From IMG/VR virus record IMGVR_UViG_3300042305_001773, positions 1-64,000 of that record: DNA of 64,000 nt; one strand, written 5' to 3'. A program made the translations under genes and the position numbers. The notes beneath the pieces were generated by a model. That model saw only the letters and a list, made by a program, of their open reading frames with translations. It did no database searches and had not been told where the DNA came from. This document shows, one piece after another, positions 1 to 50,416 of the stretch. Each line of letters starts with the position of its first letter. Position 1 is the stretch's first letter.

Positions 1-371
1 ATCACGTAGGTACGCAGCTCGTCGACGTCCTTCACAGCGCGGGGCGACACGATCCGGTCAAACATGACGCGGTAGCGCGGGCCACGGATGTAGAAGTTAA
101 TCGGGAGCGTCGCAAACGGGAGCGACACAGCCGCCGGGGAATCGGGCTCCTTGTCCACCACCTTGACGGGCTTGTCAGTGTCAACCTGACGGTCAAGCTC
201 GTCGTTGGTGATGGTCAGCGGCGGCATAATCCGCCGGTAGAACCCGTCTTCACGCATCTTGGTGCGCGTGAAGTCATTAACCGCGTCGATGGCCTGCTTC
301 TGCATGCCGGGGGTATCGAGCTGCTCAAAAAGCGTTTCGTTGAGCAGTTGGATCTCTTGCTGAGTGGGCAT
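1..371 (-). CDS. Major capsid protein, N-terminal part (runs off window)
   Basis: Manual translation MPTQQEIQLLNETLFEQLDTPGMQKQAIDAVNDFTRTKMREDGFYRRIMPP...; GGAGG RBS at 380-384; follows protease, scaffold-like and decoration-like genes. Confidence 0.7.
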   Translation of the reverse strand, partial: MPTQQEIQLLNETLFEQLDTPGMQKQAIDAVNDFTRTKMREDGFYRRIMPPLTITNDELDRQVDTDKPVKVVDKEPDSPAAVSLPFATLPINFYIRGPRYRVMFDRIVSPRAVKDVDELRTYV

Positions 372-411
372 TTTGGGAACCTCCATGTTCCTTATTTAGT
401 TAGGGATTAGA

Positions 412-25220: not shown

Positions 25221-25224
25221 TGCG

Positions 25225-28211: not shown

Positions 28212-28241
28212 TGCAGCGACAAATTGTCAAAGAGCGCGCTG

Positions 28242-29816: not shown

Positions 29817-29818
29817 GA

Positions 29819-29935
29819 TTACTTACCTTTTCGTTTAAGATTCTTCTCTAACTTTTTGATGTACTTCTCTTGCTCGTGCAATTTTTTACACTGCTGTTTG
29901 ACCTTCTTTTTCGTCCACTTGTCCCAGAAGCCCAT
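29819..29935 (-). CDS. Small basic protein, 38 aa
   Basis: MGFWDKWTKKKVKQQCKKLHEQEKYIKKLEKNLKRKGK; fills the gap with TGATG coupling. Confidence 0.5.
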   Translation of the reverse strand: MGFWDKWTKKKVKQQCKKLHEQEKYIKKLEKNLKRKGK

Positions 29936-34516: not shown

Positions 34517-36781
34517 TTACAGGTCGGCGAGATCGCTCACGCGGCCGGACTGAAGCGGTTCAACACCGCCGGCCGGAGCTTGATTCGGCTGCGGCGATTG
34601 CGGGCCGTAGTAGAACGGGTTTCGTACGTTGGGCACGTATGACCGCGCTGTTTGAGCGGCATTCGTCACGCCACGACGGACGTCATTGGCTGTATTTACT
34701 ACAGTGTTTCGCGCCGTGCCGTAGGCTGTACCGACCGCGTCGCCCATCGCAGATCCGGCGTCGTGAACGCCTTGGCCGATAGCGCGCGGAACAGCCATCG
34801 CGGCTTGTCCGGCCTGCTGTAAACCAGCGCCGGCGCGGTTGGCCATGTCCGAACCAAACTGCTGCGCAGAGCTAACATAAGGATCCACGGCCGGCGCTGT
34901 GGCACGATATGCGCCGTAGGTAGCTCCAGCCGCAATCGGCATGGCCACGGCTGTGCGAGCGGCGTTCATGGCTGTGCTGCCCGGAACCTGTGTGCCGGCC
35001 CAGCGCGCGACGTTTCCAGCGCCGCGAGCGACTTGCCCAGCGCCGTACATACCAGCGCCAGTCGCCGCACGAATACCGCCGCCGACAGCGTTACCCACAC
35101 CGCCGCGCATCATTTGTTGTGCGCCGCCGGTCGCCATCTGAGCGCCGCGATTTACAGCCGCATTACCAAGTTCGCCGGCCGCCGCGCCGGTAGCGCGACT
35201 TACTGTGCGAGCGCCGCCAGCAACGGCACGACCGCCGCCACGAGCCATCGCGCCGAGCCCTTTGGCGCCAGCGCCGATTAAACCACTCACGAGCCCAGCA
35301 GCTTCTTTTTCGCCGTGCGGCTGTTGCGCGTTCGCTGCGTCTGTCGGTACGGGGTTGGGCGCCGAGCGTTGCTTGTCGTCGATGATCTTGTTACTGCCGC
35401 GCGCACTCGGTGTGCAGCTCATCTCGGTCTTGCCGCGAGGCGCACTGGAGACAGCTTTCTTTTCTTTCTTGTCTTTCTTGTCTTTCTTTTTCTTGCTGCC
35501 GCCCGGTCGGCACGAATCGTTGCTGTACGGCTTCTTGCCCGGCACCGGTTCATAACCAGTCCAGCACCGGCCCGCTGCTTTACCGAACTCCAGCGCCGAG
35601 CCCTGCTTCATACCGTTCGTGCTCGCATTCTGCAGCTGCGGCATAAGCTGTTCAATGATATTTCTATTGTGGGTCAAAAAGTCATACATCTGCCGCCCCT
35701 GTCCGCTGCTCATGTTAGGATCGCGCCCCATGAGCATTGTCGTGCCAAACTCAGGGCTCAACTGGCTCAGCGCGTTGATCTGATCCATCGGGTTCCCGCC
35801 ACCACCGCCAAGCATGCTGTACAACCCGTTGGCGCCCTGACCGACCATGCGCCGGGGCCCGTCACCAAACATGCCGGCACCCGCGGCGCCAAGACCAGCG
35901 GCGCCGAGACCCAGTGCGCCCATACCGGCACCCAAACCAGTGTTGCCGCGCCCGCCCATGAACGCACCAGCTAGCGCCAGCGGAACACCGGCGCCGATAG
36001 CGTAGCGGGCTTCGATCGGCAGGCTGTTCCACATGCCCATCAAGCCGCCGTTGTTGGGATTTGCTTCAGCGTGCTGCGCCATAGACATCTGCGTATTCAT
36101 CTGCTGCGCATCGACGTTTTCCGGCGTCGGTTCGCTGCCAATGCCCATGGCTTTTCCGGCGTAGTGCATGCCAGCAGCACCGGTACCAGCACCCACAGCG
36201 AGATTTAGCGGATTGCGCGCATTCGTCATCGCCGACGAACCGCCGCCCATCCACTCGGGCAGATTCTTCGCCGCAGCCTGTGTCCGGCCGATTGTCTGAT
36301 CGCCGAAACGCTGGCCGGCAGCACGCGGATCTAACCCGCGCACGCCCTGCACCATGTCGTCAGCCTTGTTAAGCCCGCGACGCATGACATTCATTGTGCC
36401 GCGGCCGAGCCCGCCGACAGCGTCTACAGCTTGGCCTGCGAGTCGGCCGGGTGCGCCGTGATACAAAGAAGCGGCCTGACCTTGCGCAGCGCGGGCAGCA
36501 GCATCGAGCCGGCTGGGCCCTGTCGGTTTTGCCGTGAGCGGCACTGCTTTGTAACGATCCTTGAGCGGAATAGTCAGCGGATCAACAACGTTTTGTTGCA
36601 TGCCGCGCTGATAGCCGCGCGTGGCGCTCGTGCCGCGATTGACGAGCTGTTTTCCGCCGCGCACCGCATCATCGGCAAGACCTTTTACGGCTTTAGTACC
36701 CGCGCCAAGCAAGCCGCTGAGTAATTTATTGGCTTCTTTTTCGTGGCCGCCGATGTGCTGACCAAACTCATATGCGTTCAT
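34517..36781 (-). CDS. Gly-rich putative virion polyprotein
   Basis: MNAYEFG..EKEA leader; repeated KEA-xxL.SGL.GAG modules; CWTGY..C micro-domain. Confidence 0.6.
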   Translation of the reverse strand: MNAYEFGQHIGGHEKEANKLLSGLLGAGTKAVKGLADDAVRGGKQLVNRGTSATRGYQRGMQQNVVDPLTIPLKDRYKAVPLTAKPTGPSRLDAAARAAQGQAASLYHGAPGRLAGQAVDAVGGLGRGTMNVMRRGLNKADDMVQGVRGLDPRAAGQRFGDQTIGRTQAAAKNLPEWMGGGSSAMTNARNPLNLAVGAGTGAAGMHYAGKAMGIGSEPTPENVDAQQMNTQMSMAQHAEANPNNGGLMGMWNSLPIEARYAIGAGVPLALAGAFMGGRGNTGLGAGMGALGLGAAGLGAAGAGMFGDGPRRMVGQGANGLYSMLGGGGGNPMDQINALSQLSPEFGTTMLMGRDPNMSSGQGRQMYDFLTHNRNIIEQLMPQLQNASTNGMKQGSALEFGKAAGRCWTGYEPVPGKKPYSNDSCRPGGSKKKKDKKDKKEKKAVSSAPRGKTEMSCTPSARGSNKIIDDKQRSAPNPVPTDAANAQQPHGEKEAAGLVSGLIGAGAKGLGAMARGGGRAVAGGARTVSRATGAAAGELGNAAVNRGAQMATGGAQQMMRGGVGNAVGGGIRAATGAGMYGAGQVARGAGNVARWAGTQVPGSTAMNAARTAVAMPIAAGATYGAYRATAPAVDPYVSSAQQFGSDMANRAGAGLQQAGQAAMAVPRAIGQGVHDAGSAMGDAVGTAYGTARNTVVNTANDVRRGVTNAAQTARSYVPNVRNPFYYGPQSPQPNQAPAGGVEPLQSGRVSDLADL

Positions 36782-36928
36782 GAGTGTTCTCTTCCTGTTT
36801 TGTTATTTGTGTCGGCGCTGGGTAATCACACCGGCCGCCTTCGCAACATGTTTCCAGAATAATGCGGCAAAACGGACAAACTAGCTTGCCGCGAATCTCA
36901 ATTCCCGGGCTTTCGCACTGCGGGCACA

Positions 36929-37561
36929 TTACCACTCAAACTCCACTGGCTTGCGCGTCTTGTAGCTGAAGTCGACATCGAGCGGCGACTGAAACCGTAC
37001 GTTGGGAAGCGGCAGCTTGGGGGCTACCGCCGCTGTACCGCCAAGTAACCCAGCAGCTGCAAGTGTCGGTACGCCAAGCGGCGCGTCGCCTACCGCGCGC
37101 ACGCCCTTGCCAACAGCCTGCAGCCCTTCGCCGGCCAAGTTCACGGCATGACCAGCGCCGCGCACAGCCGACCCGCCGAGTCGCATGCCGTGGCCAAGCA
37201 CGCCGCGAATGTCTCGCGTGGTGCGTGTGCTGCCGCTGCCAATATTGTTAATCATGCTCTTGCCGGTCGTCTGCATGCCGCGGCCGGTACCCAACAGCAG
37301 GCCGCCAAGTCCAGTCGAGTTCCCAAGGCTGGTGCCGTCTTTAGGGCTAAATGTGGGCCGCGCCTTGGAGCCAATGATCTCGCCAGCGCCCTGCAAACCG
37401 CGCCCGAAACCCTTGACGATATGCTGCGAGCCGCGATTGATCGTCTGCGCGCCGCGACCAATACCAGACGCCGCGTTGGCAAGCCGCGCGACAATCTTTT
37501 CAAAGCCGGCGCCCTGCTTTTCTAGCTGGCCGACGTTGTATCCAAACTCATACGCGTTCAT
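36929..37561 (-). CDS. Gly-rich putative virion protein
   Basis: MNAYEFGYNVGQLEKQG leader. Confidence 0.6.
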   Translation of the reverse strand: MNAYEFGYNVGQLEKQGAGFEKIVARLANAASGIGRGAQTINRGSQHIVKGFGRGLQGAGEIIGSKARPTFSPKDGTSLGNSTGLGGLLLGTGRGMQTTGKSMINNIGSGSTRTTRDIRGVLGHGMRLGGSAVRGAGHAVNLAGEGLQAVGKGVRAVGDAPLGVPTLAAAGLLGGTAAVAPKLPLPNVRFQSPLDVDFSYKTRKPVEFEW

Positions 37562-37581
37562 ACTTCCTGCTCCTTTTGATA

Positions 37582-38268
37582 TTAAAAGCTGGCCAGCGGG
37601 GTGTTGGCCTGTCCGCCGCCGTAGATGCCGGGGCCGCTAGGCTGGAACTGTTGTGCCGGCTGCCCGCCGCCAATGCCCATCGCGCTCATGCCCAAACTTC
37701 CGGCTGCGCCGGCAATCGGCAGAGCAATCGGGGCAGACTGCAGCGGATTTTTAATTCCGGCGTTATACATTTTGCCCATCATGCCCGGGTTTTGAACTGT
37801 CGGCATTACCTTCTGAATACCACCGCTGAGCGCGCGATTGGCGTTCGTGACCGCGGTGGTGCCCTTGGTCAAAAACTGCTGCGAACCGCGGGTAAGCGCT
37901 TTGCCTGTGTTCGTAAAACCGGCGCGGGCTAGCTGCTTACCGCCGCCAGCAATCGCGCGGCCGACGCCCTTGGCAGCAAAACCCCATCCGGGAATGAAAC
38001 TCAGCGCGCCGCTCAAGCCAGACATACCTGCGTCCATAAGTCGGCCGTTATACAGATGGCGCGATACGTCATTAATCGCTGTGGGTACGCCCGTAAACGG
38101 ATTCGAATACAGCGCCGTGTCAGCAACCAACCCGCGCTGCGTCGGGTCGCCTAGCGGGTTGATTTGACCCATTGCTGACCCCGTACCAAGTACTGCATCG
38201 CCAAGGGCGTTCTGCGCACGCTTCTCTGTCGCCAGCCCGACGCGATATCCAAACTCATACGGCTGCAT
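37582..38268 (-). CDS. Gly-rich putative virion protein
   Basis: MQPYEFGYRVGLATEKRA leader. Confidence 0.6.
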   Translation of the reverse strand: MQPYEFGYRVGLATEKRAQNALGDAVLGTGSAMGQINPLGDPTQRGLVADTALYSNPFTGVPTAINDVSRHLYNGRLMDAGMSGLSGALSFIPGWGFAAKGVGRAIAGGGKQLARAGFTNTGKALTRGSQQFLTKGTTAVTNANRALSGGIQKVMPTVQNPGMMGKMYNAGIKNPLQSAPIALPIAGAAGSLGMSAMGIGGGQPAQQFQPSGPGIYGGGQANTPLASF

Positions 38269-38298
38269 ATTAAAACTCCGCGCCAACGCGATGACGGA

Positions 38299-38835
38299 TT
38301 ATTTGTTTGAGCATTCCCGACTGCACCGAAATACCAGCGAATAGCGTGTATCCGCGACTGGGAGTATTTCATGGTTCCAATTGTAGCGAATTTCGTCGCG
38401 CAGTTGTACAAGACTTCGGGGCGGCAGTTCTACGGAAAACGCACGCTTCTGTAACGTAAATACCATCGTGGCCGGCGTAAGTAAGCTTAATACTGTGATT
38501 ACCGCGCCGCCTTCCGGTAAATCCACGTGCGGTTTGATCACCTGTTTTTCCAAATATTGATTCAGCGTAATGGAGTCCGGGCGCTGTTCTACAAGGTTCT
38601 GCGCCACAAGCCTGTCCAGCACAAACTGAAAATGTTCTGGAATCGTGTCCGACAAAATATCATTGGGATACGGAACTGGCGAACCCCAACGCTGAATCAC
38701 ATTTCGTGTACGGACGTGTCGGCGTGTGTGCCCTGTTGGAATACCGGCCTCGATGTGCGCGAGTAATACCTGCTCCTCAGCCGGAGACAAAAACTCGTTT
38801 ATTAGCGTGAGCGTGCTGACGTCGGATGGAAGCAT
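38299..38835 (-). CDS. AlkB-family 2OG-Fe(II) oxygenase
   Basis: NQY, HVD, WNHEI and RYSLVFR motifs. Confidence 0.88.
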   Translation of the reverse strand: MLPSDVSTLTLINEFLSPAEEQVLLAHIEAGIPTGHTRRHVRTRNVIQRWGSPVPYPNDILSDTIPEHFQFVLDRLVAQNLVEQRPDSITLNQYLEKQVIKPHVDLPEGGAVITVLSLLTPATMVFTLQKRAFSVELPPRSLVQLRDEIRYNWNHEILPVADTRYSLVFRCSRECSNK

Positions 38836-38850
38836 GGCTGGCGCTGACGT

Positions 38851-39225
38851 TTATTTGTTTGGCTTGACCGGGCAGCGACGATTGTTAAGCATTTCTCGGC
38901 GAAACGCTGCCGCCGTTTTGCGTACGTTCTTGTTGTAGCAATGATAGTTAAAAAAGTGCCCAAACATAAAGTGACACGGCGACTCACACAACGTCATGAG
39001 ATTGCTTTCAGTCAATTCCAACTCCGGCGCAACACTCACCGGAAAAACATGGTGCACGGCAAGGTTTTTTGTCCGCCCGCAAACTTCACACGCCGGATGT
39101 TTTTTTAAATGTTCGGCTCTGACTCGCCGCCACTCGCCTGCTCGCTGCCGCAGATCGAGGATGTATTTGGGGCGCAACCAGAGCGGCAGGCCGCGGTAGA
39201 AATAGCCGAAAAGTTTTGCAAACAT
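38851..39225 (-). CDS. HNH endonuclease
   Basis: CEVCG..VHH...NLMTLC..CH..GH. Confidence 0.85.
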   Translation of the reverse strand: MFAKLFGYFYRGLPLWLRPKYILDLRQRAGEWRRVRAEHLKKHPACEVCGRTKNLAVHHVFPVSVAPELELTESNLMTLCESPCHFMFGHFFNYHCYNKNVRKTAAAFRREMLNNRRCPVKPNK

Positions 39226-39347
39226 GGCCGGACTTTCGTGCTGCCGCGAACATACGGCGGATCATAGGGGCAGTTTTTACATTTTTTGCCGCAGCACATA
39301 CGCTGCGCCAGAAGGATGTCGCGAGACAAGGGCTGATACTTACTCAC
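39105..39347 (-). CDS. Small Cys-rich protein (CCG..C..CPY)
   Basis: MCCGKKCKNCPY; tail overlaps the HNH gene. Confidence 0.5.
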   Translation of the reverse strand: MSKYQPLSRDILLAQRMCCGKKCKNCPYDPPYVRGSTKVRPCLQNFSAISTAACRSGCAPNTSSICGSEQASGGESEPNI

Positions 39348-39603
39348 ACTCGTTGTACTTCACGACAAGATACGTCCCGAGAAATGCGCCCAACGCCAAC
39401 GGAACCACATAGAGCGGATTCTTGGAGTACGAGATCACGCCGTATGCGCCGAGGCTATACAAAAAAGAACTCACCACGGCGGCATTGATTGGTTGCCGCT
39501 TGCTGACGCAGATCACGTACATGGCATACAAGATATCAATGACCACATAGGTCACGAAGATTACGCCGGCCGTGCCCCAGTGAAAGTCTTGCCACATGTT
39601 CAC
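39340..39603 (-). CDS. Membrane protein
   Basis: Three TM segments. Confidence 0.6.
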   Translation of the reverse strand: MNMWQDFHWGTAGVIFVTYVVIDILYAMYVICVSKRQPINAAVVSSFLYSLGAYGVISYSKNPLYVVPLALGAFLGTYLVVKYNECE

Positions 39604-39604
39604 C

Positions 39605-39958
39605 TCACTTCACTGTTGCGGCGTGAGTGAACTTCTTCTCGTAGTGGGAGTAAATTTCCGCAAACGCAACGCCCCACGCAGCGTCATGGGCTAACTTATT
39701 AAACGCTTCGTCCGTCGTGGCTTCGTCAAGCCGATGGTTCCACGCCCGCGCATGTGCCCACTCGTGGATCAAGACGTCCATGGCGCGGGATTCATCCAGA
39801 CTCTTGTCGATCTGGATGTGGAACTTCTTGCCCTGTTTCCAGCAGCGGCCCTCTAATTTAGATAGCTTTACCCGGCGTACGCTCACGGGAAAAGCCGCGG
39901 GACACTCGTTTTTGAGCATCCGCAGGAGGGCTTGATAATATTTAAAACGAGCCGCCAT
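39605..39958 (-). CDS. SprT-like HExxH metallopeptidase
   Basis: LIHEWAH...HDAAW. Confidence 0.65.
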   Translation of the reverse strand: MAARFKYYQALLRMLKNECPAAFPVSVRRVKLSKLEGRCWKQGKKFHIQIDKSLDESRAMDVLIHEWAHARAWNHRLDEATTDEAFNKLAHDAAWGVAFAEIYSHYEKKFTHAATVK

Positions 39959-40033
39959 GCTCTATCCTCCTGAAGGGCGTCCTTGCCACAACGGAGTGAT
40001 TATACTTGAGCCGGCGGAGTTTGGCGGCAGCGA

Positions 40034-41218
40034 TTATTTCGCGTTATTTTGCAGCTGCGCTAACACAGCCGCGGCGCTTTCTTTAACTTCCTCGTCACCC
40101 GAGTCTTCCGACTTTTCCTCGGACTTTTCTTCTTTTTCGTCGCTCTCGGGCTTTTTCTTTTTCTTACCGATACTGGAGCCGATGTTACTGCCCAGATGCG
40201 CGCCGGCACCCAGACCAGCAGCGCCGCCGGCTAACAGGCCAATACCGGCACCCGGACCGCCGCCCAGCGCGCCGCCAGCGAGAGCGCCCATGATGCCACC
40301 GCCAGCGCCGCCAGCCAGCCCACCAATACCACCGCCCGCGACACCCCCCAACGTAGAAAGCAGCGACGATTGTTTTTGCGCGCCACGAAGCCGCATGGGC
40401 TCGGGTGTGCCGCTCAAAAATCGCAGCGCCGGGGCCATCATCTGTTCAAACGACGACGAGCCGTCGCGGTCGAGACCGGTGAAAACGGTTGGTCCAAGTT
40501 TTGGTTTTTGCAGCGGCGTTTTATTTACAGGCGCGGCGGGTGTTGCCTTTGGTTTGTTAAGCGATCGGTAGGCTTCGCTCGCGGCCAGCGCCCCGCTGGC
40601 CCCAATAGTGCCGCCAATAGCCGGATAAAACACGTCATCACTGGCTAACGTTTTTGCCGCAGTGCCCAATCCTTTGCGGATGCTATTTAAAACTGACGAG
40701 GCGGCCCCGGCTTCTTTATTTTCCCACGACGGCTTGCCAATGGCAGCGCTGGCGCCGGCATAGCCCAGCCCGGCACCACCGACCGCGCCTGTCGTACCGC
40801 CGCGCACAATCGCGTTGCGCAGATACGCGTCGGTGTACGGCGACAGCGAGCCCGGGCTGCGAATCGGGACCTTCTTGCCGCCGCGTGACATCGTCCGACC
40901 ACCGCGCTGTACAAACCGCTTGAGCGCGTCGGCTAATTGCGCTGCGCTCGGGCCAAAGAGTGTTTTGCCGATACGAGGACTTGCCGCCGCGAGCGCAAGA
41001 GCCCCCAGCGCTCCGCCTACACCACCGCCAATCATGCCAGCACCTGTGCCAGTGCCTTTGACAGCCCCACGGCCCAGTCCTTCCATGCGGTGTCCAGACG
41101 GCGACGTGACTGCGCCCAGACCAGCGCCCACACCCGCTGTGATCGGCAGCGTCACGAACGCCTGCTTGCCGACCTGTTTCCCAACCTGCATGCCAAATTG
41201 TTCGGGCGTAACACTCAT
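40034..41218 (-). CDS. Glycine-zipper putative virion polyprotein (alternative start 41344)
   Basis: PEQFGMQVGKQVGKQA leader; long GxxxG tracts; KEA and KQS sites. Confidence 0.55.
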   Translation of the reverse strand: MSVTPEQFGMQVGKQVGKQAFVTLPITAGVGAGLGAVTSPSGHRMEGLGRGAVKGTGTGAGMIGGGVGGALGALALAAASPRIGKTLFGPSAAQLADALKRFVQRGGRTMSRGGKKVPIRSPGSLSPYTDAYLRNAIVRGGTTGAVGGAGLGYAGASAAIGKPSWENKEAGAASSVLNSIRKGLGTAAKTLASDDVFYPAIGGTIGASGALAASEAYRSLNKPKATPAAPVNKTPLQKPKLGPTVFTGLDRDGSSSFEQMMAPALRFLSGTPEPMRLRGAQKQSSLLSTLGGVAGGGIGGLAGGAGGGIMGALAGGALGGGPGAGIGLLAGGAAGLGAGAHLGSNIGSSIGKKKKKPESDEKEEKSEEKSEDSGDEEVKESAAAVLAQLQNNAK

Positions 41219-41321
41219 GCGAGCACCTGTGGCTTGAATATGGTTTTGAAGTTTGCGCGTAGTCACGTGCTGCATGATCTTTTCAAACAGCTTGCGCCGC
41301 GACAGCGCCAACTCCGTTAGT

Positions 41322-43511
41322 TTACTTACTGGAATCGGCGGCATCGTCGTCGTCCAGAATGCTTTTGCTGGCTTGGGGTTTGGCGTCTGGATATTTTAAC
41401 AGCCGCCGCTTCTTCTTTGAAAGCGGGCGTTTGGGCGGCGTTAATTTGAGCGTTTGAAACACAGCGCTCGCCTTTTCTTGCACTTCTTTGTCTTCTGTTA
41501 ACTCTCCTCGCCGCCGCTTGAGATACTTCTTTAATTCCTGCTCCTGATAGGCTTGGAGCATAGTTTTTACTTTGTCAGACCGGGTGCGCGCAACTAACTT
41601 CGCGGGGTCAATCGCCCAGTGCTGCAGCGCCCAGCCTCGTCTTGGCGTAGGATTAGTCATAAACGGCCCGCCATGACGCGCTTTGAAGCTCGCCCAGCGC
41701 TTGATCTGGCGCGCATCTTCGTCGGGAAGCCTGCGGCCCGAATTGTAGTTCTGGTACCACTCCAGCCAGCCCTTCGGGTCATGTTCTGTCACCCATTCCG
41801 GCTTCCATTCGCCTAAACTCGCGAGCCGTGGGCCCTCTTTTTCGTATAACGACTTGTACACACCCATGCGATGCAGCTGGCCGGGCGTGAAGTCAGGCTG
41901 AAACTCAGGAAGATCCGCGCTCTGCTTCTCCTGCTCTCTTTGCTTGCGGTATTTATCGCCCTCGTCTTGCAGGATCTTGCGGAAGATCTCGTTGAGCTGT
42001 TCTTTCTCGGCGGTAAGGTGTTCAAGTACTTCGTCACCTGTGCGCTCGCGCTTGTACCCCATGAGCTTGCCGATGAAGCTCGGGTCTTGGCTGGCACTTA
42101 GATATCTTTGCACTTGGACGTTCTTGAGTTCTTCAGGGAGATCTCGATGCGAGTCAAAGCGCAGACCACGACCACGAGCTTGCTGGCTGCGCGACTCATG
42201 CCAGTGCGGATCTAAAAGCTGAATGAGACTGGTGCCCTTGGTAGACAAACCCTCGGCGCCAGCAGGGCCAATTAAGAGCGCCCGGAGCTTGCCTTGGTTG
42301 TATGCGTCCACAGCGGCTTGGCGCGCCTTTGAGCTAACGCCGCCATGGAAAAACGCATGCGGGATCTTGGCTTTCTCTAGACCAGCTGCGTAGGGCGCCA
42401 AGCCAGAGTCAATGAAGTTGGAATAGATAATCGCCTTCTTGCGCTTGTCTTCACCCAGTGTCTTCTGCAGGTTCTGAAACGCGGCTTGTAATTTGGCGCT
42501 CTGCTGAAACGCCTTGGCCGGATCTTTGTCGGCGCGGAACGGCTGCGTGGATAAGCTCACTTGGCGCAGGCCCGTGAGAAAGCTATTTAACTTGGCCAGC
42601 TCGTCGCGGGACAACGGAAACTCTTGATCCAGCTTCCACAAAAACCCCGGCGGAATCTTCGTGCGAATAGCTTTTTGAATCTTGTCCTGCGCGTTGGACA
42701 ACGGTACGCGCACGACCTCTTCTTTAACATTTACACCTTCGGGCGTTTTGCTGGGCTGGTAATCTACTTTGCCTGCAAGCAACTGCCGCAGTTCTTTTTC
42801 GTTCTTGACGACTGGCTTGACGCCGGGCTTCACGCCACGCAGCCAACCAAACAAACCCGGCCGCACGGTTTTGTAGTCGATATACCGCTTCTCGAATTCT
42901 TCCGGCGTAATCTCTTTGTTATGGAGCATCGAGAGCAGATTGGCGAGATCCGTAGGCGAATTCGTGATCGGCGAACCAGTAAGTAACATTAAACGCTTCG
43001 CCTGCGCGGCGGCTTCAGCAGCTCCGGCCGAACTCGCGCTCCCCGGATTACGGAGCCTGTGCGCCTCGTCCATGATCAGCGTGCTGGGCGGCTTTTGAAA
43101 CTTCTTGCCCAGCGCCAGCCCCGTGTAGCTCATGATCTCGGGGTTAGAGTTCTGCGTGAACTTCTTGATTTCTTTGTCGAAATTACCCCTGAGACTAGCC
43201 GGGACTACCACGCCATACTCTTCGCCGTCTTGCTTCTTCGCTTCTTCAGCGGCGGCCAGTGAAGACAGCGATTTACCAGAACCTAAGCCGTGATAGACCA
43301 GTAAGCGCGGATCAGTGGTAGAAATACGGTCGGCGATTCTCTGCTGATGTTCCTGCAGCTGGATCTCGGGAAGAAGTTCAGCTTGTTTTTCGCTGCCGTT
43401 TTGGCGCTCGGAATTCCCGGCTGCCAAATTGGCCACTTTGTGCCATACGCTATCGGGCAGTGCGGATGGCTTGGGAGTGCTGCCGAGAATGCTATTTATT
43501 TCTGCGCTCAT
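41322..43511 (-). CDS. SF2/SNF2-like helicase of D6/D11 type with C-terminal W-rich domain
   Basis: LLVYHGLGSGKS, DEAH, TGSP, GAEGLS, DPHW..SR..QARGRGLR.DSH..LP. Confidence 0.88.
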   Translation of the reverse strand: MSAEINSILGSTPKPSALPDSVWHKVANLAAGNSERQNGSEKQAELLPEIQLQEHQQRIADRISTTDPRLLVYHGLGSGKSLSSLAAAEEAKKQDGEEYGVVVPASLRGNFDKEIKKFTQNSNPEIMSYTGLALGKKFQKPPSTLIMDEAHRLRNPGSASSAGAAEAAAQAKRLMLLTGSPITNSPTDLANLLSMLHNKEITPEEFEKRYIDYKTVRPGLFGWLRGVKPGVKPVVKNEKELRQLLAGKVDYQPSKTPEGVNVKEEVVRVPLSNAQDKIQKAIRTKIPPGFLWKLDQEFPLSRDELAKLNSFLTGLRQVSLSTQPFRADKDPAKAFQQSAKLQAAFQNLQKTLGEDKRKKAIIYSNFIDSGLAPYAAGLEKAKIPHAFFHGGVSSKARQAAVDAYNQGKLRALLIGPAGAEGLSTKGTSLIQLLDPHWHESRSQQARGRGLRFDSHRDLPEELKNVQVQRYLSASQDPSFIGKLMGYKRERTGDEVLEHLTAEKEQLNEIFRKILQDEGDKYRKQREQEKQSADLPEFQPDFTPGQLHRMGVYKSLYEKEGPRLASLGEWKPEWVTEHDPKGWLEWYQNYNSGRRLPDEDARQIKRWASFKARHGGPFMTNPTPRRGWALQHWAIDPAKLVARTRSDKVKTMLQAYQEQELKKYLKRRRGELTEDKEVQEKASAVFQTLKLTPPKRPLSKKKRRLLKYPDAKPQASKSILDDDDAADSSK

Positions 43512-43513
43512 GC

Positions 43514-43759
43514 TCAGTTCACCATGAGATTGCGCGCAGTTTGATACATCGCCCACAGCCCCAAGCCGGCGGACACCAAGCCCAGATATTTAAACGACGT
43601 GTACACCGTGACAAAGAAGTAAATGCCGAGCCAACACGCCAACGCACCCGTCACAACTGCGGCGATTATCCATTTTTTCACCGCAAACAATGCGGCGATT
43701 GGCCCGCACAGCAGCACGGCGCACACGATGAAAAAGACCAGTAACGCCAGACTTTCCAT
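43514..43759 (-). CDS. Membrane protein
   Basis: Three TM segments. Confidence 0.6.
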   Translation of the reverse strand: MESLALLVFFIVCAVLLCGPIAALFAVKKWIIAAVVTGALACWLGIYFFVTVYTSFKYLGLVSAGLGLWAMYQTARNLMVN

Positions 43760-43766
43760 GTCGTGC

Positions 43767-44615
43767 CTATTCCGCAGGAGTGCTGTTTACGCTGGCTTTC
43801 GGCTCTGGCCCTAATGTAGCCTGACCGACCAGCGCGTGCTCGTGTTGTCGGATCTGCAATTCTACCCAATCCCGGTACATACTCACACGCGTAAATGCGC
43901 TGTCGTCGCCATAGGTCCCGTCTGGTTTTCCGTCGGCGTGCGCCAAAAAAGAGTTAATCCCGGCCAGTTCGTTGCCGATAAACATGCCGCCCCCTGAATC
44001 TCCGGGCGCAATCATGAACTCCAGCGGAAACCGCCCATCTCGCCGTGGTGAGCAGGCCACCACCGAGAGAAACGCTGACGAAAGTTTGTTTTGCCCCGCG
44101 CGCCGTTTGTTGTCGGACGTGGTAGCGCCTGTAGTAAAATTCCCCGTTGAACCCCAGCCCGCAATGGTGACCGACTTCCCGTTTTCATCTGCTTTGCTGT
44201 ACAGCGGCACGTAAAAGTCCAGTTTGAAATCTTCTTCCACGTAGCACAGCGCGATGTCGTGCAGGCCCACTTTGTCTTCGTTGTAATCTTTGTGCCGAAC
44301 TTTGTATGCCACCGGGTGTTTCTTCTCGCCAACGTAAATCACATCGTGTTTTGATTCGTTAATAACATGCGCCGCGGTCAATGCCCAATGCGGTCGAATA
44401 ATCACCGCCGACGCTAGTTGCTCGTGGGTTTTCTCGCACTTCTTGCAGTCCACAATGTTCGTGATGCGGACGACAAAGGGAAACTGCTTGCCAAATTCGA
44501 CGTACTTGGCGTCCGGCGTGTTGGGGTCGATCGTGCCAGCCATCGCTACCCGAGAGGCAGCGATCAGAATAATCACGTAGCGTAGCAGGCGGGCGAATAG
44601 TTCTTGCGCGTTCAT
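43767..44615 (-). CDS. Secreted trypsin-like (S1) serine protease
   Basis: Signal peptide, LTAAH, DIAL, GDSGG. Confidence 0.9.
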   Translation of the reverse strand: MNAQELFARLLRYVIILIAASRVAMAGTIDPNTPDAKYVEFGKQFPFVVRITNIVDCKKCEKTHEQLASAVIIRPHWALTAAHVINESKHDVIYVGEKKHPVAYKVRHKDYNEDKVGLHDIALCYVEEDFKLDFYVPLYSKADENGKSVTIAGWGSTGNFTTGATTSDNKRRAGQNKLSSAFLSVVACSPRRDGRFPLEFMIAPGDSGGGMFIGNELAGINSFLAHADGKPDGTYGDDSAFTRVSMYRDWVELQIRQHEHALVGQATLGPEPKASVNSTPAE

Positions 44616-44653
44616 GGCAAGCCCCCAGTCTTTGATATGTAAGTGTTGCTATC

Positions 44654-46669: not shown

Positions 46670-46764
46670 AGTGCGGCCGTCGCGTTGCTAACAATATTCC
46701 GCCATTCTACTGCGCTTTATTCTATTACAAAAGCTGCGTTGGGCTGAAAACTCATTACGGCGCT

Positions 46765-46802
46765 GTAAAAACAGTTACCAGAGGTAAAAACAGTTACCAG
46801 AG
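46765..46802. repeat. 19-bp tandem direct repeat, 2 copies
   Basis: GTAAAAACAGTTACCAGAG twice. Confidence 0.9.
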
Positions 46803-46855
46803 CGCTGATAGCTAAAAAAACGCTTAGCAGCCGGGAGTGGTTAGCTCCCGGCTGC
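46802..46855 (-). terminator. Hairpin plus T-tract fused to boundary motif
   Basis: GCAGCCGGGAG/CTCCCGGCTGC stem, then TTTTTTTAGCTATCAGC on the minus strand. Confidence 0.7.
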
Positions 46856-46870
46856 GTCTGCGTTCTTCGC

Positions 46871-47485
46871 TCACACTTCGGCGTCGTCGGGAAACAGGTC
46901 GTGTTCCGACCGTTCCCAATCGTTGTCGAAGCAGTTATCCTCGATCAGCTGCTCGAACTCGGCCTCGGCATCGTCTTCGTCTGCGGCGCCGTACAACTCT
47001 TCTTCGAGTTCACGGCGGGCGCGGGCGAAGCGAGCCTTGACCTTTTCCAGACCCTCGGCGTCGGTTTCCTGCACACCGTTGTTGGGGTACAGGCCGCCGT
47101 ACTGGGCCGCGCGGTCTTCGATCCGCCGGAGGTAGACCACAGCGGCACGGTAACTGGTGAACGTTGCGTCCCAGTCGCCATAGCCGTCGTAGTTCGTGCC
47201 TTCGGAGATGTAGAAGAAACCAGCGCGGTCCTCGACGTCGAGCGCAGCTTCGTAGCTGCTGGCCTCGCCATCGGACTTGGCGAGGCAGTCATCGCAGTAG
47301 TAGACGGGCTCCCATCCGAAGGAGTCCGTTTCACCTTTTACGATGACAGTCGCGTCGTTTGTGCACAGGCAGTTGTAGCCCTCGCACTTTTCGGTGGCGA
47401 CGACGAAAGTACCACCGGGGCCGGCTCCGAACTGCAAGGTTTTGCCATTGTCAGCGGGGATGCGGGCCTTAATCGTCAGTGCCAT
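46871..47485 (-). CDS. Acidic putative early protein
   Basis: AGGAG RBS; own promoter and terminator. Confidence 0.7.
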   Translation of the reverse strand: MALTIKARIPADNGKTLQFGAGPGGTFVVATEKCEGYNCLCTNDATVIVKGETDSFGWEPVYYCDDCLAKSDGEASSYEAALDVEDRAGFFYISEGTNYDGYGDWDATFTSYRAAVVYLRRIEDRAAQYGGLYPNNGVQETDAEGLEKVKARFARARRELEEELYGAADEDDAEAEFEQLIEDNCFDNDWERSEHDLFPDDAEV

Positions 47486-47565
47486 GGTTATCTCCTTTGG
47501 AGGTTATGGCGATGAAACGGCTGGAGACACAACACGTGGCTTACCAGCAAAGAGCTAGGCTCCTT

Positions 47566-47598
47566 ACTAGATATACCCGGTTTTGGCCGTTTATTTAG
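47566..47598 (-). promoter_or_regulatory. Phage promoter P1
   Basis: CTAAATAAA-N14-TATATCTAGT. Confidence 0.75.
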
Positions 47599-47601
47599 AT
47601 A

Positions 47602-50199
47602 TCAGCGCCCGGGCTTGCCGGCCGGCTGTTGTCTGGCCGCGGCGTCAGCTTTAAAGCCGCCCAGTGTCTTCTTGCCATAGTGCGCGAGCAGAGGCGCAGA
47701 AGACGCCAGCATGTACGTGGGCAGGCCAATGAACGCCGACCGGCCGCCCTTGAGCTTCATCTGGCGCATGAGCTTGGCGCCCCGACGAGACGCATCAAAC
47801 TCAGACGCTAACATCGGCATAGAACCGACTGTGCCCGCAATCGCCGAGTTCCGAGAGTTGTCCTCGTTGTTTGAAAGCAGCGCGCCGGCCGTACCTAATC
47901 CAAGCGCGGGCCGGCCGATTTGATTACCGCGCATGAGCCACTTGCCGCCCATGTGGTGTCCCAGCTCGTGCGCCAAAACACCCGGATTTTTCATTCGCCA
48001 GATGTGCCCAATCGTGGGTTTTGATATCCCGATTCCCGGATTCGCTGGTGTATAAAACGCTGGAGAATTACGCACAATATCAGCAGCTGACCGGCGCATT
48101 CTGTACTTGATGTTATTCATGAGATCGCCAATCCAGTTGCCCGTTGTTTTAGGCGCTATTTTCGGGTCAATCTTGCTGGCGACGGTCAAATTATCTACGA
48201 CATCTACGCCCTGACTCTTCGCGTAGTCACTGATTTGCTGCCACGCTCTGTTCCTTTCCATCGTTACCGGGGTGTCAAACAATTCAGGGCGCGCCACACG
48301 GTTCATGTACGCAGTTAATGGCAAGCCAATCGCAGCATTTGTCGCGGGCATGCCACCGAGATACCAGCCCATCGAGTGCCCTAGACCGGGCTTAGCGGGT
48401 TCTTTTTTTTTAACTTCGGCTGCGCTTTTTTTACCAAAGCGCGCGGCAAAATCTGCGGGCGAGACCGGGCGCAATTGAAACGGCGCGGCGGGTGTAGCGG
48501 GTGCTGGGGTTGCTGCGGGCGGGGCTGGTGGTGCAGTAACCGGAGCTGCCGGGCGCTGAACAACCGGCGCAGGTTTAGCCTGCGGCGCAACAACCGGGGC
48601 CTGACGAACTGCTTGAACTGGCGCTGGTTTCGGCTGGGTTACGGCGGGGGCAGCAGGGCGTGGCGTCGGGGCTTGTGACGGCAAGCTCGTCGCGGCACCG
48701 CGTTGACTCATGTAAACGTCGCGCATTTTTTGATAAGTTTGCATTTTTTGCCATTCCGGCACGCCGTTGTTTACGTTTACCACATTCTTCATGTAGTTAG
48801 TGAGGTCTGCGGACGTGGGTCTGGCGGGCATCTTGAACGCTGTCTGCGCGGCGGCGGCCACCGGCTTTTTCGCAACCCCGCTGACCGCTTTACCGGCCAT
48901 GCGACCAATTGAGCCGAGTAAACCGGCCAGCTTCTCGCCGCCGACAGAATTAGCCGTCCCAAACGCTGCGTTACCTGTAATATCACCCGTCGAAGACAAC
49001 GCGCCGTATGAATTAATGGGATTGGCGTTGGGAGACGATCCGCCGCCAACAGGGGGTAGTTGGCCAGACGGGGCCGGGGAGCCCATGTTTGCTGGCTGGG
49101 CGGCGGGAGCCTGTGGTTGGGCCTGTGGCGCCTGTGCCTGCATGCCCATAGGCAGCGGCGTACCCATCGCAGGCATGGCGTAACGTTTAATTCCGGCGTT
49201 TGCAGGCATGCGGGCAGCCTCTCGGGCCTCAATTTCAGCCCTTTCATTCTCTATCGCCTGCATAATGGGCTGCGACAAAACCGCTGAGATCTTCGCTAAC
49301 AAGGGATTTATTACGTTATTTGGCTTTGTTTCCGAGTTACACCTTTCGCCCTTGGTTTTGACGACCTTGGGTGGATTTTCGCCTGCAACTGTTGGCTTAT
49401 CACTGGCCGGCTGCTCGATATAGACCTCTTTAGTATCCGCTTGCTTGGATAATTTCCTGTAAATATCGAGGGCTACAGAGTTTACAGCCGATTGTTTATA
49501 AGTTGTCATATTGGGTTTATTTGCAAAGGCTGCGTTAATGGGGGATTGGCTTGCGGTACCGGTGACATGGGGCAAAAACCCGACAACTCCACCAACACCA
49601 AGGTTCATGACACCGTTTGCGACCCCGATACCCTTCTCTAATGTCTCGGTGGGGAGTTCGCCGTACTGTGTGACATAGCGCTGGGTCTGATTCTGAAGCT
49701 GCTGGACGTCATTGAAGGCTTTAGTGGCCTTGTTGACGGTACTTTTATTAACGCCAGCGATTGTTTTAGGTAGTTTCGCGTTTACGAGCTTATCGGAGAG
49801 TTCTAATTGGCGCGCAGACAGAACAGCGGCGTTTGGGAGGCGCTTGAGTAGCCTGTACGAGCGCATGGGGTTAAAGAACAGCACGCTTTCCCTTGCCGCG
49901 TTGTTAAATAACTGCTGCAACATCGGCGAGCCAACCCGTTTTGATAGCATTCCGGCAGCTGCAAGGCCGGCGGTTGTGCCCAGAGTGCTTAATCCGGCGG
50001 CAGCGGCAGTGTCTCGGGCTGCGGCACCGGGAGAAAAGTCGGCTTTTTTGCTATCTGTATCTGACTCGGGCTCTTTTTTACTGTCAGACGCGTACATGGG
50101 GAGTTTCTTTTTGGTCGGATACTCATGCGCCCAGCGTTTAGCGATCTCTGGATGCTCGGCCCACAGAAACCTACGCTGTTTTTCAGACTTAAACGGCAT
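47602..50199 (-). CDS. Putative virion polyprotein with C-terminal Zn-metallopeptidase
   Basis: MPFKSEKQRRFLWA N-module; KKA, KQSA, KQA, KLA and KSA sites; LAHELGHH...EFDAS. Confidence 0.65.
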   Translation of the reverse strand: MPFKSEKQRRFLWAEHPEIAKRWAHEYPTKKKLPMYASDSKKEPESDTDSKKADFSPGAAARDTAAAAGLSTLGTTAGLAAAGMLSKRVGSPMLQQLFNNAARESVLFFNPMRSYRLLKRLPNAAVLSARQLELSDKLVNAKLPKTIAGVNKSTVNKATKAFNDVQQLQNQTQRYVTQYGELPTETLEKGIGVANGVMNLGVGGVVGFLPHVTGTASQSPINAAFANKPNMTTYKQSAVNSVALDIYRKLSKQADTKEVYIEQPASDKPTVAGENPPKVVKTKGERCNSETKPNNVINPLLAKISAVLSQPIMQAIENERAEIEAREAARMPANAGIKRYAMPAMGTPLPMGMQAQAPQAQPQAPAAQPANMGSPAPSGQLPPVGGGSSPNANPINSYGALSSTGDITGNAAFGTANSVGGEKLAGLLGSIGRMAGKAVSGVAKKPVAAAAQTAFKMPARPTSADLTNYMKNVVNVNNGVPEWQKMQTYQKMRDVYMSQRGAATSLPSQAPTPRPAAPAVTQPKPAPVQAVRQAPVVAPQAKPAPVVQRPAAPVTAPPAPPAATPAPATPAAPFQLRPVSPADFAARFGKKSAAEVKKKEPAKPGLGHSMGWYLGGMPATNAAIGLPLTAYMNRVARPELFDTPVTMERNRAWQQISDYAKSQGVDVVDNLTVASKIDPKIAPKTTGNWIGDLMNNIKYRMRRSAADIVRNSPAFYTPANPGIGISKPTIGHIWRMKNPGVLAHELGHHMGGKWLMRGNQIGRPALGLGTAGALLSNNEDNSRNSAIAGTVGSMPMLASEFDASRRGAKLMRQMKLKGGRSAFIGLPTYMLASSAPLLAHYGKKTLGGFKADAAARQQPAGKPGR

Positions 50200-50416
50200 G
50201 GCGTAGCTCAAACGATAGTGAACTCAGAGGAATTCCCGGATAGTTGGAGTTCGAACTAGTCGGAAAAACCTACGAGTTGGGCGGCGCGGCTGTTCCCAAG
50301 CTGAATACGCCCCATTTTGGCATACAAGGGCTGAGAAGAAAAGGGCGCTCGACGCGTCTGATACACTAGAGGGTGGCTTGGGGAATGCAATCAGGCGTTT
50401 CGACAAGGAGGTCGCC

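What the first reader, a model, noticed from the sequence alone, without database searches (positions are those of the whole stretch)
34517..48935. Predicted cleavage unmasks amphipathic, antimicrobial-peptide-like N-termini
Seen: residues right after KxA-type sites read GLLGSIGRMAGKAVSGVAKK (47602 ORF), NKLLSGLLGAGTKAVKGLAD and AGLVSGLIGAGAKGLGAMAR (34517 ORF), GFEKIVARLANAASGIGRG (36929) and GAASSVLNSIRKGLGTAAKTLA (40034). These are cationic amphipathic helices followed by glycine zippers. Inference: maturation-activated membrane-penetrating proteins that build the DNA/protein entry channel, conceptually like adenovirus protein VI.
Basis: inference. Interest (0 to 1): 0.65.

Follow-up and report, generated by a model that had tools for sequence, protein, structure and literature searches.

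The report
EKxA-marked internal proteins of a jumbo phage
A 205-kb uncultured phage marks many head and internal proteins with a short E-K-x-A signal, probably a targeting and cleavage tag; in a few proteins a cationic amphipathic helix follows it, and that helix could act on the host membrane, but nothing about cleavage or membrane action has been tested.

Summary
If helical, they are strongly amphipathic and cationic: their hydrophobic moment is in the 96th-99.7th percentile of this phage's proteome and their charge is +2 or +3.

They follow a real signal, E-K-x-A with a K-x-A core:
- It occurs 27 times against 6.7 expected in proteins of the first 53 kb of this 205-kb jumbo phage, with no excess elsewhere.
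- The same excess appears in a relative and in the gene block around the capsid gene of Salmonella phage Arash, most of whose products were found in virions by mass spectrometry.
- Three ORFs start with a conserved leader, M-x-[AP]-[YF]-E-F-G-x6-E-K-x-A.
- Inside larger ORFs the motif marks junctions where cassettes are inserted or swapped.

Best reading: this is a capsid-targeting and processing signal, analogous to the T4 CTS or the phiKZ AxE site. It sits on fast-evolving, Gly/Ala-rich internal (ejected) proteins.

Limits:
- Only 5 of 31 motif sites are followed by such helices.
- The property is conserved only in the 34517 and 36929 families.
- Two of the five peptides lie in inserts unique to this genome.
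- GxxxG zippers do not follow the sites.

Cleavage, packaging and membrane action are untested. The adenovirus protein VI analogy is reasonable but unproven.

The parts
36731..36781 (-). N-terminal leader of ORF 34517-36781 (aa 1-17), of the form M-N-A-Y-E-F-G-x6-E-K-E-A
   Evidence: The leader with [ED]-K-x-A is kept in six relatives and in 18 cluster representatives.
36671..36730 (-). Amphipathic cationic segment 1 of ORF 34517 (aa 18-37)
   Evidence: Moment 0.524, 99.3rd percentile, charge +3. The property is kept in the family: median 91st percentile in 18 representatives.
35864..36010 (-). Uncharged Gly/Ala-rich hydrophobic hairpin of ORF 34517 (aa 258-306), in its best-conserved central domain
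   Evidence: Alignment. About 26 representative clusters match the central-domain query at E<=1e-30, about 20 of them over nearly its full length. Coordinates.
35462..35596 (-). Internal junction (L-E-F-G-K-A-A-G) followed by the Cys-Trp module and a poly-Lys tail ending in E-K-K-A (aa 396-440 and the tail)
   Evidence: The module, always preceded by K-x-A or K-x-x-A, occurs in over 140 diverse proteins at N-termini, C-termini or internally.
35240..35311 (-). Second EKEA site (aa 491-494) and amphipathic segment 2 (aa 495-514) of ORF 34517
   Evidence: Moment 0.436, 96.5th percentile, charge +2. A like segment follows EKEA in the distant relative P0145. The site is only loosely kept in G002-G004.
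37451..37561 (-). Leader (aa 1-18) and amphipathic segment (aa 19-37) of ORF 36929-37561
   Evidence: F6, G7, E14 and K15 are invariant and A17 nearly so in 16 homologues at 49-98% identity. Moment 0.560, 99.7th percentile. After the site, the median is about the 93rd percentile in the family.
37016..37084 (-). Conserved uncharged hydrophobic stretch near the C-terminus of ORF 36929 (aa 160-182)
   Evidence: Near-invariant columns 163-186. Hydropathy 1.57.
38215..38268 (-). Leader of ORF 37582-38286 (true start probably the Met at aa 7). It has the same E-F-G...E-K-R-A form but no amphipathic helix after it.
41141..41197 (-). Internal leader-like junction of ORF 40034-41344 (aa 50-68, Q-F-G...K-Q-A), followed by an uncharged Gly-rich stretch
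   Evidence: In relative G001 a module of about 350 aa is inserted exactly between two K-Q-A copies here.
40409..40720 (-). NKEA site (aa 209-212) and an insert of roughly 100-115 aa unique to this genome (aligned as aa 213 to about 325; the range given here covers aa 209-312). The insert starts with amphipathic segment aa 213-234.
   Evidence: Relatives run from K-E-A straight into the Gly-zipper stretch. No homologue of the insert in five relatives. Moment 0.530, charge +3.
40190..40408 (-). Long uncharged Gly/Ala/Leu 'zipper' stretch of ORF 40034 (aa 313-385), conserved in relatives
48865..48963 (-). Junction F-G-x8-E-K-L-A (aa 417-429) and amphipathic segment (aa 430-449) of ORF 47602-50211
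   Evidence: The junction is kept in all relatives, but different modules follow it. No homologue of module 430-597 in relatives. Moment 0.507, charge +3.
47605..48438 (-). Second junction (F-G-K-K-S-A, aa 592-597) and a C-terminal domain with an H-E-x-x-H motif. The domain is present only in this genome and G001.
   Evidence: No Pfam family.
41322..43556 (-). SNF2-type helicase. It has a variable N-extension, then K-x-A (aa 56-59 = 43380-43391), then the conserved core.
   Evidence: Pfam and PHROG hits. Junction conserved across relatives. The Arash homologue gp217 is in virions by mass spectrometry.
2872..4329 (-). Candidate head protease-scaffold fusion, with four EK.A sites. It is the homologue of Arash virion protein gp222, which has four EK.A sites plus one T-K-Q-A.
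   Evidence: 35% identity to gp222. Invariant His and Ser residues and invariant W-A-E-K-x-A. The enzymatic role is inferred only: no family, PDB or fold support.
3..386 (-). N-terminal part of the major capsid protein gene, with Q-K-Q-A at aa 29-32 (291-302). The gene continues at the other end of the record.
   Evidence: Arash MCP has V-K-E-A at about the same place, residues 26-29.

Best explanation
The window is the first 64 kb of a complete 205-kb contractile-tailed jumbo phage that carries a multisubunit RNA polymerase.

In this lineage, proteins encoded in the head and internal-protein block carry a short linear signal. Its core is K-x-A, usually E-K-x-A. The signal sits either after a short N-terminal leader (in three ORFs M-x-[AP]-[YF]-E-F-G-x6-E-K-x-A) or at junctions between cassettes of modular proteins.

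I read it as the capsid-targeting and/or cleavage signal of the head-maturation protease. It would be the counterpart of the T4 capsid targeting sequence with gp21's L/I-x-E site, and of the A-x-E site of phiKZ and SPN3US.

ORFs 34517, 36929, 37582, 40034 and 47602 would then be fast-evolving, Gly/Ala-rich internal head proteins. They would be trimmed or cut into modules during maturation and ejected with the DNA, the virion RNA polymerase and the helicase.

In one paralogous module type (36929 and both ends of 34517), processing would leave a cationic amphipathic helix at the new N-terminus. Together with the weakly hydrophobic, uncharged Gly/Ala stretches further in, this helix is a plausible membrane-binding and membrane-inserting element used at entry.

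Shown: the peptides, their amphipathy, the motif excess, its protein-level selection, the leader conservation, the cassette junctions, and the same excess in a relative and in Arash.

Inferred: cleavage, packaging, membrane action and a role in entry.
For: Genome context:
- Jumbo phage with RNA polymerase beta and beta' genes, a tail sheath and a portal.
- In the distant cultured relative Arash, the polymerase, the helicase and most products of the neighbouring genes are in virions by mass spectrometry.

Motif:
- EK.A 27 against 6.7 in block 1-53.5 kb, and 12 against 11.7 elsewhere.
- Relative G002: 22 against 6.0 in the block, 15 against 11.3 elsewhere.
- Arash gene block gp199-238: 18 against 3.6, with several sites in gp220, gp222, gp223 and gp225, next to the capsid gene.
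- Codon use at the motif matches background, so selection is on the protein.
- N-terminal sites are kept in orthologues.
- The leader's invariant residues are kept at 49-98% identity.
- The same leader form stands at the N-terminus of stand-alone proteins and inside fused ones.
- Cassettes are inserted or exchanged exactly at the motif.
- The helicase core always follows K-x-A after a variable extension.
- Both capsid proteins have K-x-A near residue 30.

Amphipathy:
-.
- It is conserved as a property in 18 representatives of the 34517 family and in the 36929 family.
- 34517 and 36929 are weakly paralogous.
- Arash virion protein gp220 carries N-K-E-A followed by a like segment.

Known precedents for leaders and protease motifs: PMC9026906 and PMC10052503.
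Against: - There is no proteomic or biochemical evidence for cleavage, packaging or membrane action in this phage.
- No recognisable prohead protease was found: Pfam S77 and S78 are absent, and the candidate at 2872-4329 has no family, PDB or fold support.
- Some leaders are only 1-4 residues long (M-E-K-L-A), which suits a recognition motif better than a propeptide.
- In front of the Cys-Trp module, K-x-A (or K-x-x-A) precedes nearly every copy, even one at the very N-terminus, so it may be structural there.
- Arash coverage figures of 100% for gp221 and gp223 would not fit complete removal of sequence at the motif, though those figures look unreliable.
- 26 of 31 sites have no amphipathic helix after them.
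- Internal sites in 150 representatives show none in general.
- The gene block also holds enzymes and small membrane proteins, so not everything in it need be virion-borne.
- Part of the motif excess in the representatives comes from one conserved poly-Lys ending.
Confidence: 0.5

Rival explanations
1. The motif is a docking or assembly motif that is not cleaved. It would bind the scaffold, portal or capsid interior. The cationic amphipathic helices and Gly/Ala/Arg-rich helical regions would serve protein-protein or DNA contacts in an inner-body-like core, with no membrane role.
For: - Leaders as short as one to four residues.
- K-x-A (or K-x-x-A) precedes nearly every copy of the Cys-Trp module, which is followed by a poly-Lys tail suited to DNA binding.
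- Each protein has further amphipathic segments.
- The hydropathy of the Gly-rich stretches is only marginal, 1.5-1.6.
- Arash reports full coverage of gp221 and gp223.
Against: - Several sites per protein in scaffold-like proteins next to the capsid gene, and sites at cassette borders, resemble protease motifs in T4, phiKZ and SPN3US.
- A variable extension before an invariant K-x-A and a conserved enzyme core looks like a propeptide.
Confidence: 0.22
2. The amphipathic segments are a by-product of composition. Gly/Ala/Lys/Arg/Leu-rich, largely helical or disordered proteins would produce such windows often, so their position after the motif would have no function of its own.
For: - 2-7 further segments of like moment per protein.
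- No enrichment after 129 internal sites in representatives.
- Two of the five lie in unique inserts.
- The sequence after the site is poorly conserved.
Against: - 5 of 31 sites against a 3.6% background, P = 0.0045.
- Shuffles of the same residues rarely reach the moment.
- The property persists across 18 representatives clustered at 50% identity in spite of sequence turnover: 56% are at or above the 90th percentile.
Confidence: 0.13
3. These are not virion proteins. They would be membrane proteins made in the infected cell, for lysis (holin- or disruptin-like cationic peptides), superinfection exclusion or host takeover. They would be processed by the neighbouring secreted trypsin-like protease (43767-44615) or by the H-E-x-x-H domain of ORF 47602, as proposed for polyvalent proteins.
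For: - A trypsin-family protease with a signal-like N-terminus and an H-E-x-x-H domain lie in the same cluster.
- Small membrane proteins and an endolysin-like gene lie at 21-30 kb.
- The PHROG families hit by the helicase are long multi-domain proteins of 1881-2269 profile positions. Their likeness to 'polyvalent' proteins is from memory.
Against: - The same motif marks the capsid protein, the proteins next to it and the Arash gene block around the capsid gene, most of whose products are virion proteins.
- The H-E-x-x-H domain is missing in G002-G004, which keep the motif.
- The leaders are not hydrophobic signal peptides.
- The S1-pocket residue of the trypsin-like protein is not Asp by simple register. 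I read this from the sequence; it is not a proper alignment.
Confidence: 0.1

Closest known systems
T4 internal proteins with the capsid targeting sequence (CTS), processed by prohead protease gp21
   Same: - A short N-terminal leader is shared by otherwise divergent, fast-evolving proteins.
- The leader ends at the same short motif that recurs in head and scaffold proteins.
- It is proposed as a way to load varied cargo into the head (PMC9026906; here).
   Different: - The motif is E-K-x-A rather than L/I-x-E.
- The leader is 13-20 residues with an E-F-G core, or sometimes almost absent.
- The motif also marks internal cassette junctions.
- No gp21-family protease was detected.
- Neither cleavage nor targeting has been shown.
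Ejection and inner-body proteins of phiKZ, 201phi2-1 and SPN3US, cut by gp175/gp245 at A-x-E
   Same: - A jumbo myophage that packages a multisubunit RNA polymerase and many internal proteins.
- N-terminal propeptides of 20-250 residues.
- Several motif copies within propeptides and scaffold-like proteins (PMC10052503).
   Different: - No detectable sequence relationship of the five ORFs to any GenBank phage.
- Different motif.
- A different phage lineage, whose nearest cultured kin is Arash at about 32% identity in the polymerase.
Adenovirus protein VI
   Same: The concept: a precursor cut by the viral maturation protease, with an amphipathic helix near the new N-terminus that acts on a membrane at entry. 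(Established knowledge, not tested here.)
   Different: - No homology: Pfam found nothing.
- A bacterial virus with a contractile tail.
- Membrane lysis is not shown.
- The helix is not a general feature of the motif sites.
Ejectosome proteins of T7 (gp14/15/16), P22 (gp7/16/20) and N4
   Same: Capsid-internal proteins that are expelled and form or line a trans-envelope conduit. In N4 they travel with a virion RNA polymerase (PMC13434306).
   Different: - Those are podoviruses.
- No sequence or fold link was found.
- No protease-dependent activation is known to me for them.
Salmonella phage Arash gp220, gp221 and gp224 (virion proteins by mass spectrometry)
   Same: - They lie next to the capsid gene.
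- They carry [EN]-K-x-A (gp224 has A-K-S-A) followed by Lys/Gly-rich and uncharged Gly/Ala stretches.
- The gp220 segment has moment 0.41 and charge +3.
   Different: - Homology to the window's ORFs is not significant (best E = 0.065).
- The function and processing of the Arash proteins are unknown.

Membership tests
CTS-type capsid-targeted internal proteins (T4 model) | A short N-terminal leader shared by otherwise unrelated proteins of one phage | tested here: met
   The same leader stands on ORFs 34517, 36929 and 37582 and, internally, on 40034 and 47602. It is conserved in homologues.
CTS-type capsid-targeted internal proteins (T4 model) | The leader ends at the head protease's recognition motif, which recurs in capsid and scaffold proteins | tested here: inconclusive
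   The motif is enriched in the head block, in the capsid protein N-terminus and in scaffold-like proteins of this phage and of Arash. That it is a protease motif is inferred.
CTS-type capsid-targeted internal proteins (T4 model) | Removal of the leader by the prohead protease, and presence of the mature protein in virions | not testable with these tools
   No proteomic data exist for this uncultured phage. The Arash supplement has no peptide-level data.
Prohead proteases S77 (T4 gp21) and S78 (HK97 gp4) | A match to the family profile somewhere in the genome | tested here: not met
   No match at E <= 1 in all six frames of the 205-kb record. The candidate at 2872-4329 has no Pfam or PDB hit, and its AF2 model has pLDDT 45.
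Adenovirus protein VI-like lytic factor | Sequence membership | tested here: not met
   The Pfam scan of all five ORFs gave no family at E <= 0.01.
Adenovirus protein VI-like lytic factor | An amphipathic helix at the N-terminus created by maturation cleavage | tested here: inconclusive
   High moments directly after the motif, conserved in two families. The cleavage itself is unproven, and helicity is only weakly predicted.
Adenovirus protein VI-like lytic factor | Membrane disruption by the released protein | not testable with these tools
   This needs liposome or cell assays.
Glycine-zipper membrane segments (GxxxGxxxG) | Zipper motifs directly after the amphipathic helices, as the finding states | tested here: not met
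   0-2 GxxxG in the 40 residues after each site, at or below the protein-wide mean in four of five and near the mean in the fifth. No Pfam Gly-zipper family in the five ORFs. Long uncharged Gly/Ala stretches exist elsewhere in the proteins.

The most novel reading that the evidence does not exclude
A widespread clade of roughly 200-kb freshwater jumbo phages, and more distantly Arash, would use an undescribed E-K-x-A 'address and cut' code. The code would let them load freely exchangeable cassettes into the capsid as polyproteins. Maturation would then release, among other things, cationic amphipathic peptides and Gly/Ala hairpins that stay harmless inside the head. On ejection these would open or remodel the inner membrane so that the virion RNA polymerase, the helicase and the DNA can pass. 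This would be a phage counterpart of adenovirus protein VI.
Probability: 0.15. Interest if true: 0.8.

Novelty: new variant of a known kind. Interest (0 to 1): 0.5.

Why it matters
If E-K-x-A is the targeting and processing code of this lineage, it gives a simple sequence rule for predicting which proteins these abundant, uncultured jumbo phages package and eject. It would also explain the cassette-like evolution of those proteins, and it would offer a tag for loading foreign cargo into a cultured relative (Arash), as the CTS does in T4.

The amphipathic N-termini would then be testable candidates for how a phage that ejects a large protein load gets it across the inner membrane. That step is poorly understood for jumbo phages. 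If the sites are not cut, the motif still marks an unknown assembly interaction.

Tried and rejected
Searches and models that gave nothing useful:
- Pfam, PHROGs and NCBIfam gave nothing for ORFs 34517, 36929, 37582, 40034 and 44654, and only a 26-residue PHROG match for 47602.
- tblastn of 34517 and 47602 against GenBank phages, and megablast of the whole region: no match.
- ESM Atlas look-up of the 34517 central domain: no usable hit.
- AF2 of the candidate protease (pLDDT 45) and of ORF 36929 (pLDDT 52): both too poor for fold search, so none was run.
- phmmer against PDB, and a permissive Pfam scan of 2872-4329: nothing.
- Pfam S77 and S78 in the whole genome: nothing.
- A k-mer search for a shared promoter in 80 intergenic regions, meant to class the genes as early or late: no clear motif.
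- The Arash supplement holds gene tables, not peptides, so it does not test cleavage.

Ideas rejected:
- The motif reflects a nucleotide signal such as an internal Shine-Dalgarno site. Rejected because the Glu, Lys and Ala codons at the motif vary as in the background.
- A loose pattern F-G...K-x-[AS] is itself enriched. It is not: 10 against 7.3.

Not done:
- I did not run complex prediction. I claim no specific pair, and the monomers fold poorly.
- No reads tool was used.
- Only genetic code 11 was used.
Full report
**What the window is.** The window is the first 64 kb of a 205,044-bp IMG/VR virus record that CheckV rates complete. Nearly all genes run on the minus strand.
- It encodes a large beta-like (1467 aa) and a beta'-like (626 aa) subunit of a multisubunit RNA polymerase.
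- Elsewhere in the record there are a DNA polymerase, a primase, a helicase and a tail sheath, and a portal.
- The capsid gene spans the two ends of the record, which overlap.
- The nearest cultured relative is Salmonella phage Arash, at about 32% identity in the polymerase.
- In Arash the polymerase subunits, the helicase and most products of the genes around the capsid gene were found in virions by mass spectrometry (PMC10585845).
- Close uncultured relatives are common: over 1,000 homologues of one head-block protein. Five related genomes were used for comparison.

**The observation.** All five peptides are present as quoted.
- Taken as helices, their hydrophobic moments are 0.44-0.56. That is the 96.5th-99.7th percentile of this proteome. 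Charge is +2 or +3, and shuffles of each peptide reach the value with P <= 0.003.
- The HeliQuest-type discriminant, a formula I took from memory, is 1.07-1.49, which is the 89th-96th percentile.
- Of 31 motif sites in the gene block, exactly these five are followed by a strongly amphipathic, cationic segment. Background is 3.6%, P = 0.0045.
- The 'glycine zipper' part fails. GxxxG is not enriched after the sites. The long uncharged Gly/Ala stretches lie elsewhere: 34517 aa 258-306, 40034 aa 69-125 and 313-385, and 36929 aa 160-182.
- Each protein also has 2-7 other segments of like moment.

**The motif before the peptides is the stronger finding.**
- EK.A occurs 27 times in the minus-strand proteins of 1-53.5 kb, against 6.7 +/- 2.6 in shuffles. 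In the rest of the genome it occurs 12 times against 11.7.
- Relative G002 repeats this: 22 against 6.0 in the block and 15 against 11.3 elsewhere.
- So does the Arash gene block gp199-238: 18 against 3.6. There the consensus is [MILVF]-[ET]-K-x-A, with several copies in gp220, gp222, gp223 and gp225 next to the capsid gene.
- Codons at the motif vary as in the background, so the selection is on the protein and not on a nucleotide signal.
- Many sites lie 2-40 residues from the N-terminus and are kept in orthologues.
- Both capsid proteins have K-x-A near residue 30.

**The leader.**
- ORFs 34517, 36929 and 37582 start with M-x-[AP]-[YF]-E-F-G-x6-E-K-x-A.
- In 16 homologues of ORF 36929 at 49-98% identity, F6, G7, E14 and K15 are invariant and A17 nearly so. 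The residues after the motif drift.
- The same form occurs inside ORFs 34517, 40034 and 47602. It also occurs at the N-terminus of unrelated stand-alone proteins, for example directly before the Cys-Trp module.
- 34 of 150 representative proteins have E-K-x-[AS] within the first 35 residues.

**Junctions.**
- In ORF 47602 all relatives share the sequence up to G-E-K-[LMI]-[AG] and then continue with different modules.
- In ORF 40034 this genome has a unique insert of roughly 100-115 aa between K-E-A and the Gly-zipper stretch. Relative G001 has a module of about 350 aa inserted between two K-Q-A copies.
- The helicase core always follows K-x-A after a variable extension.
- The 47602 module (aa 430-597) and the 40034 insert have no homologue in five relatives.
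- These ORFs evolve fast, at 30-65% identity, beside neighbours that are 90-97% identical.

**How far the amphipathic helix is conserved.**
- In 18 representatives of the 34517 family (clustered at 50% identity), the segment after the N-terminal site has a median at the 91st percentile. 56% are at or above the 90th percentile, and all have charge 0 to +3.
- In the 36929 family the median is about the 93rd percentile.
- The N-terminal region of 34517 weakly resembles 36929-family proteins, and its C-terminal module gives one marginal hit to that family. They look like one paralogous module type.
- The 37582 family has no such helix.
- 129 internal sites in the representatives show no enrichment; their median is the 44th percentile.
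- AF2 of ORF 36929 places the motif in a break between helix 3-15 and helix 21-64, but with pLDDT below 50 there.

**Interpretation.** The pattern has five parts:
- a short motif restricted to one gene block;
- the motif at N-termini after short leaders;
- repeated copies in scaffold-like proteins;
- a copy in the capsid protein;
- copies at cassette borders.

This matches what is known for T4 and for phiKZ and SPN3US. T4 has a 10-residue CTS shared by divergent internal proteins and cut by gp21 (PMC9026906). In SPN3US 14 A-x-E sites were mapped, propeptides are 20-254 residues long and some are cut at several sites (PMC10052503). I therefore take E-K-x-A to be the targeting and processing signal of the head protease, and the five ORFs to be internal, ejected proteins.

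The protease itself is not identified.
- ORF 2872-4329 is a candidate. It is the homologue of Arash virion protein gp222. It has invariant His and Ser residues, a helical C-terminal half and four motif copies.
- This rests on inference only.

A membrane role for the amphipathic helices and the marginally hydrophobic Gly/Ala stretches is plausible but untested. DNA or protein contacts inside the head are a fair alternative, given the poly-Lys tails and the very short leaders.

**Caveats.**
- Part of the motif excess in the 150 representatives comes from one conserved poly-Lys-E-K-K-A ending, and those proteins share modules, so the counts are not independent. The counts in the window do not depend on this.
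- The Arash coverage values are not decisive.
- ORF starts need correction: 47602 at its fifth codon, 37582 at its seventh, and the helicase further downstream.

**Verdict.** The thing of interest is a new variant of a known kind: an undescribed leader and junction motif in a little-known jumbo-phage lineage. Cationic amphipathic N-termini are a conserved feature of one module family, not of the motif in general.

No reads tool was used. No code other than table 11 was used.

Noticed in passing
window 28782-29816 (-): An actin-like protein matches Pfam Volactin (PF25216) over its full length, E = 8e-62. It is 94-98% identical in the related phages. A phage-borne actin homologue in a jumbo phage could serve a cytoskeletal role in infection.
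   Followed up: partly
window 59467-59807 (-), and 27339-27412, 60031-62102 (-): ARAGORN calls a phage-encoded tmRNA with tag peptide ending in P-A-L-A-A, plus six tRNA genes (Asn, Leu x2, Glu, Val, Lys).
   Followed up: no
window 3-386 (-) and G000 204358-205041 (-): The major capsid gene is split by the ends of the record. The two ends encode the same roughly 40 residues, so the record is a permuted or circular assembly with a short terminal overlap. The ORF at 32-196 is probably spurious.
   Followed up: partly
window 35462-35596 (-); proteins P0138-P0287: A module of about 40 aa (K-x-A-R-C-W-x-G-Y-E-P-V-P-G-K...S-C-R-P, then poly-Lys) occurs in hundreds of otherwise unrelated metagenomic proteins, at either end or inside. 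It often appears with other mini-modules (a Cys-rich one, a 'P-A-W-Q-R-S...N-L-K-A-P-V' one and a 'L-W-x-N-I-H-A-K-R-K-R-G' one). Its function is unknown.
   Followed up: partly
window 43767-44615 (-) and 50378-50746 (+): A trypsin-family protease and a thioredoxin-like protein both have signal-peptide-like N-termini, which suggests periplasmic phage enzymes. The thioredoxin gene is one of the few on the plus strand.
   Followed up: no
window 47605-48420 (-) and 39605-39958 (-): There are two H-E-x-x-H proteins. One is the C-terminal domain of ORF 47602, which has no Pfam family and is present only here and in G001. The other is a small SprT-like protein (E = 1.4e-4, below Pfam's cut-off).
   Followed up: partly
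window 33750-34457, 38299-38835, 38851-39225, 52220-53455 (-): Genes for PhoH, a 2OG-Fe(II) oxygenase, an HNH endonuclease and an acyl-transferase/NAAA-like hydrolase are interleaved with the Gly-rich ORFs. Whether they are packaged is unknown.
   Followed up: no
window 21267-30297 (-): A run of small proteins, each with one to three strongly hydrophobic segments, flanks an endolysin-like gene (22493-23320). This is probably a lysis and membrane-protein cluster.
   Followed up: no
L044 (Arash 125001-175000): Arash shows the same E/T-K-x-A excess in its gene block around the capsid gene, with a hydrophobic residue before the Glu or Thr. As Arash is cultured and has virion mass-spectrometry data, the cleavage idea can be tested there.
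   Followed up: partly
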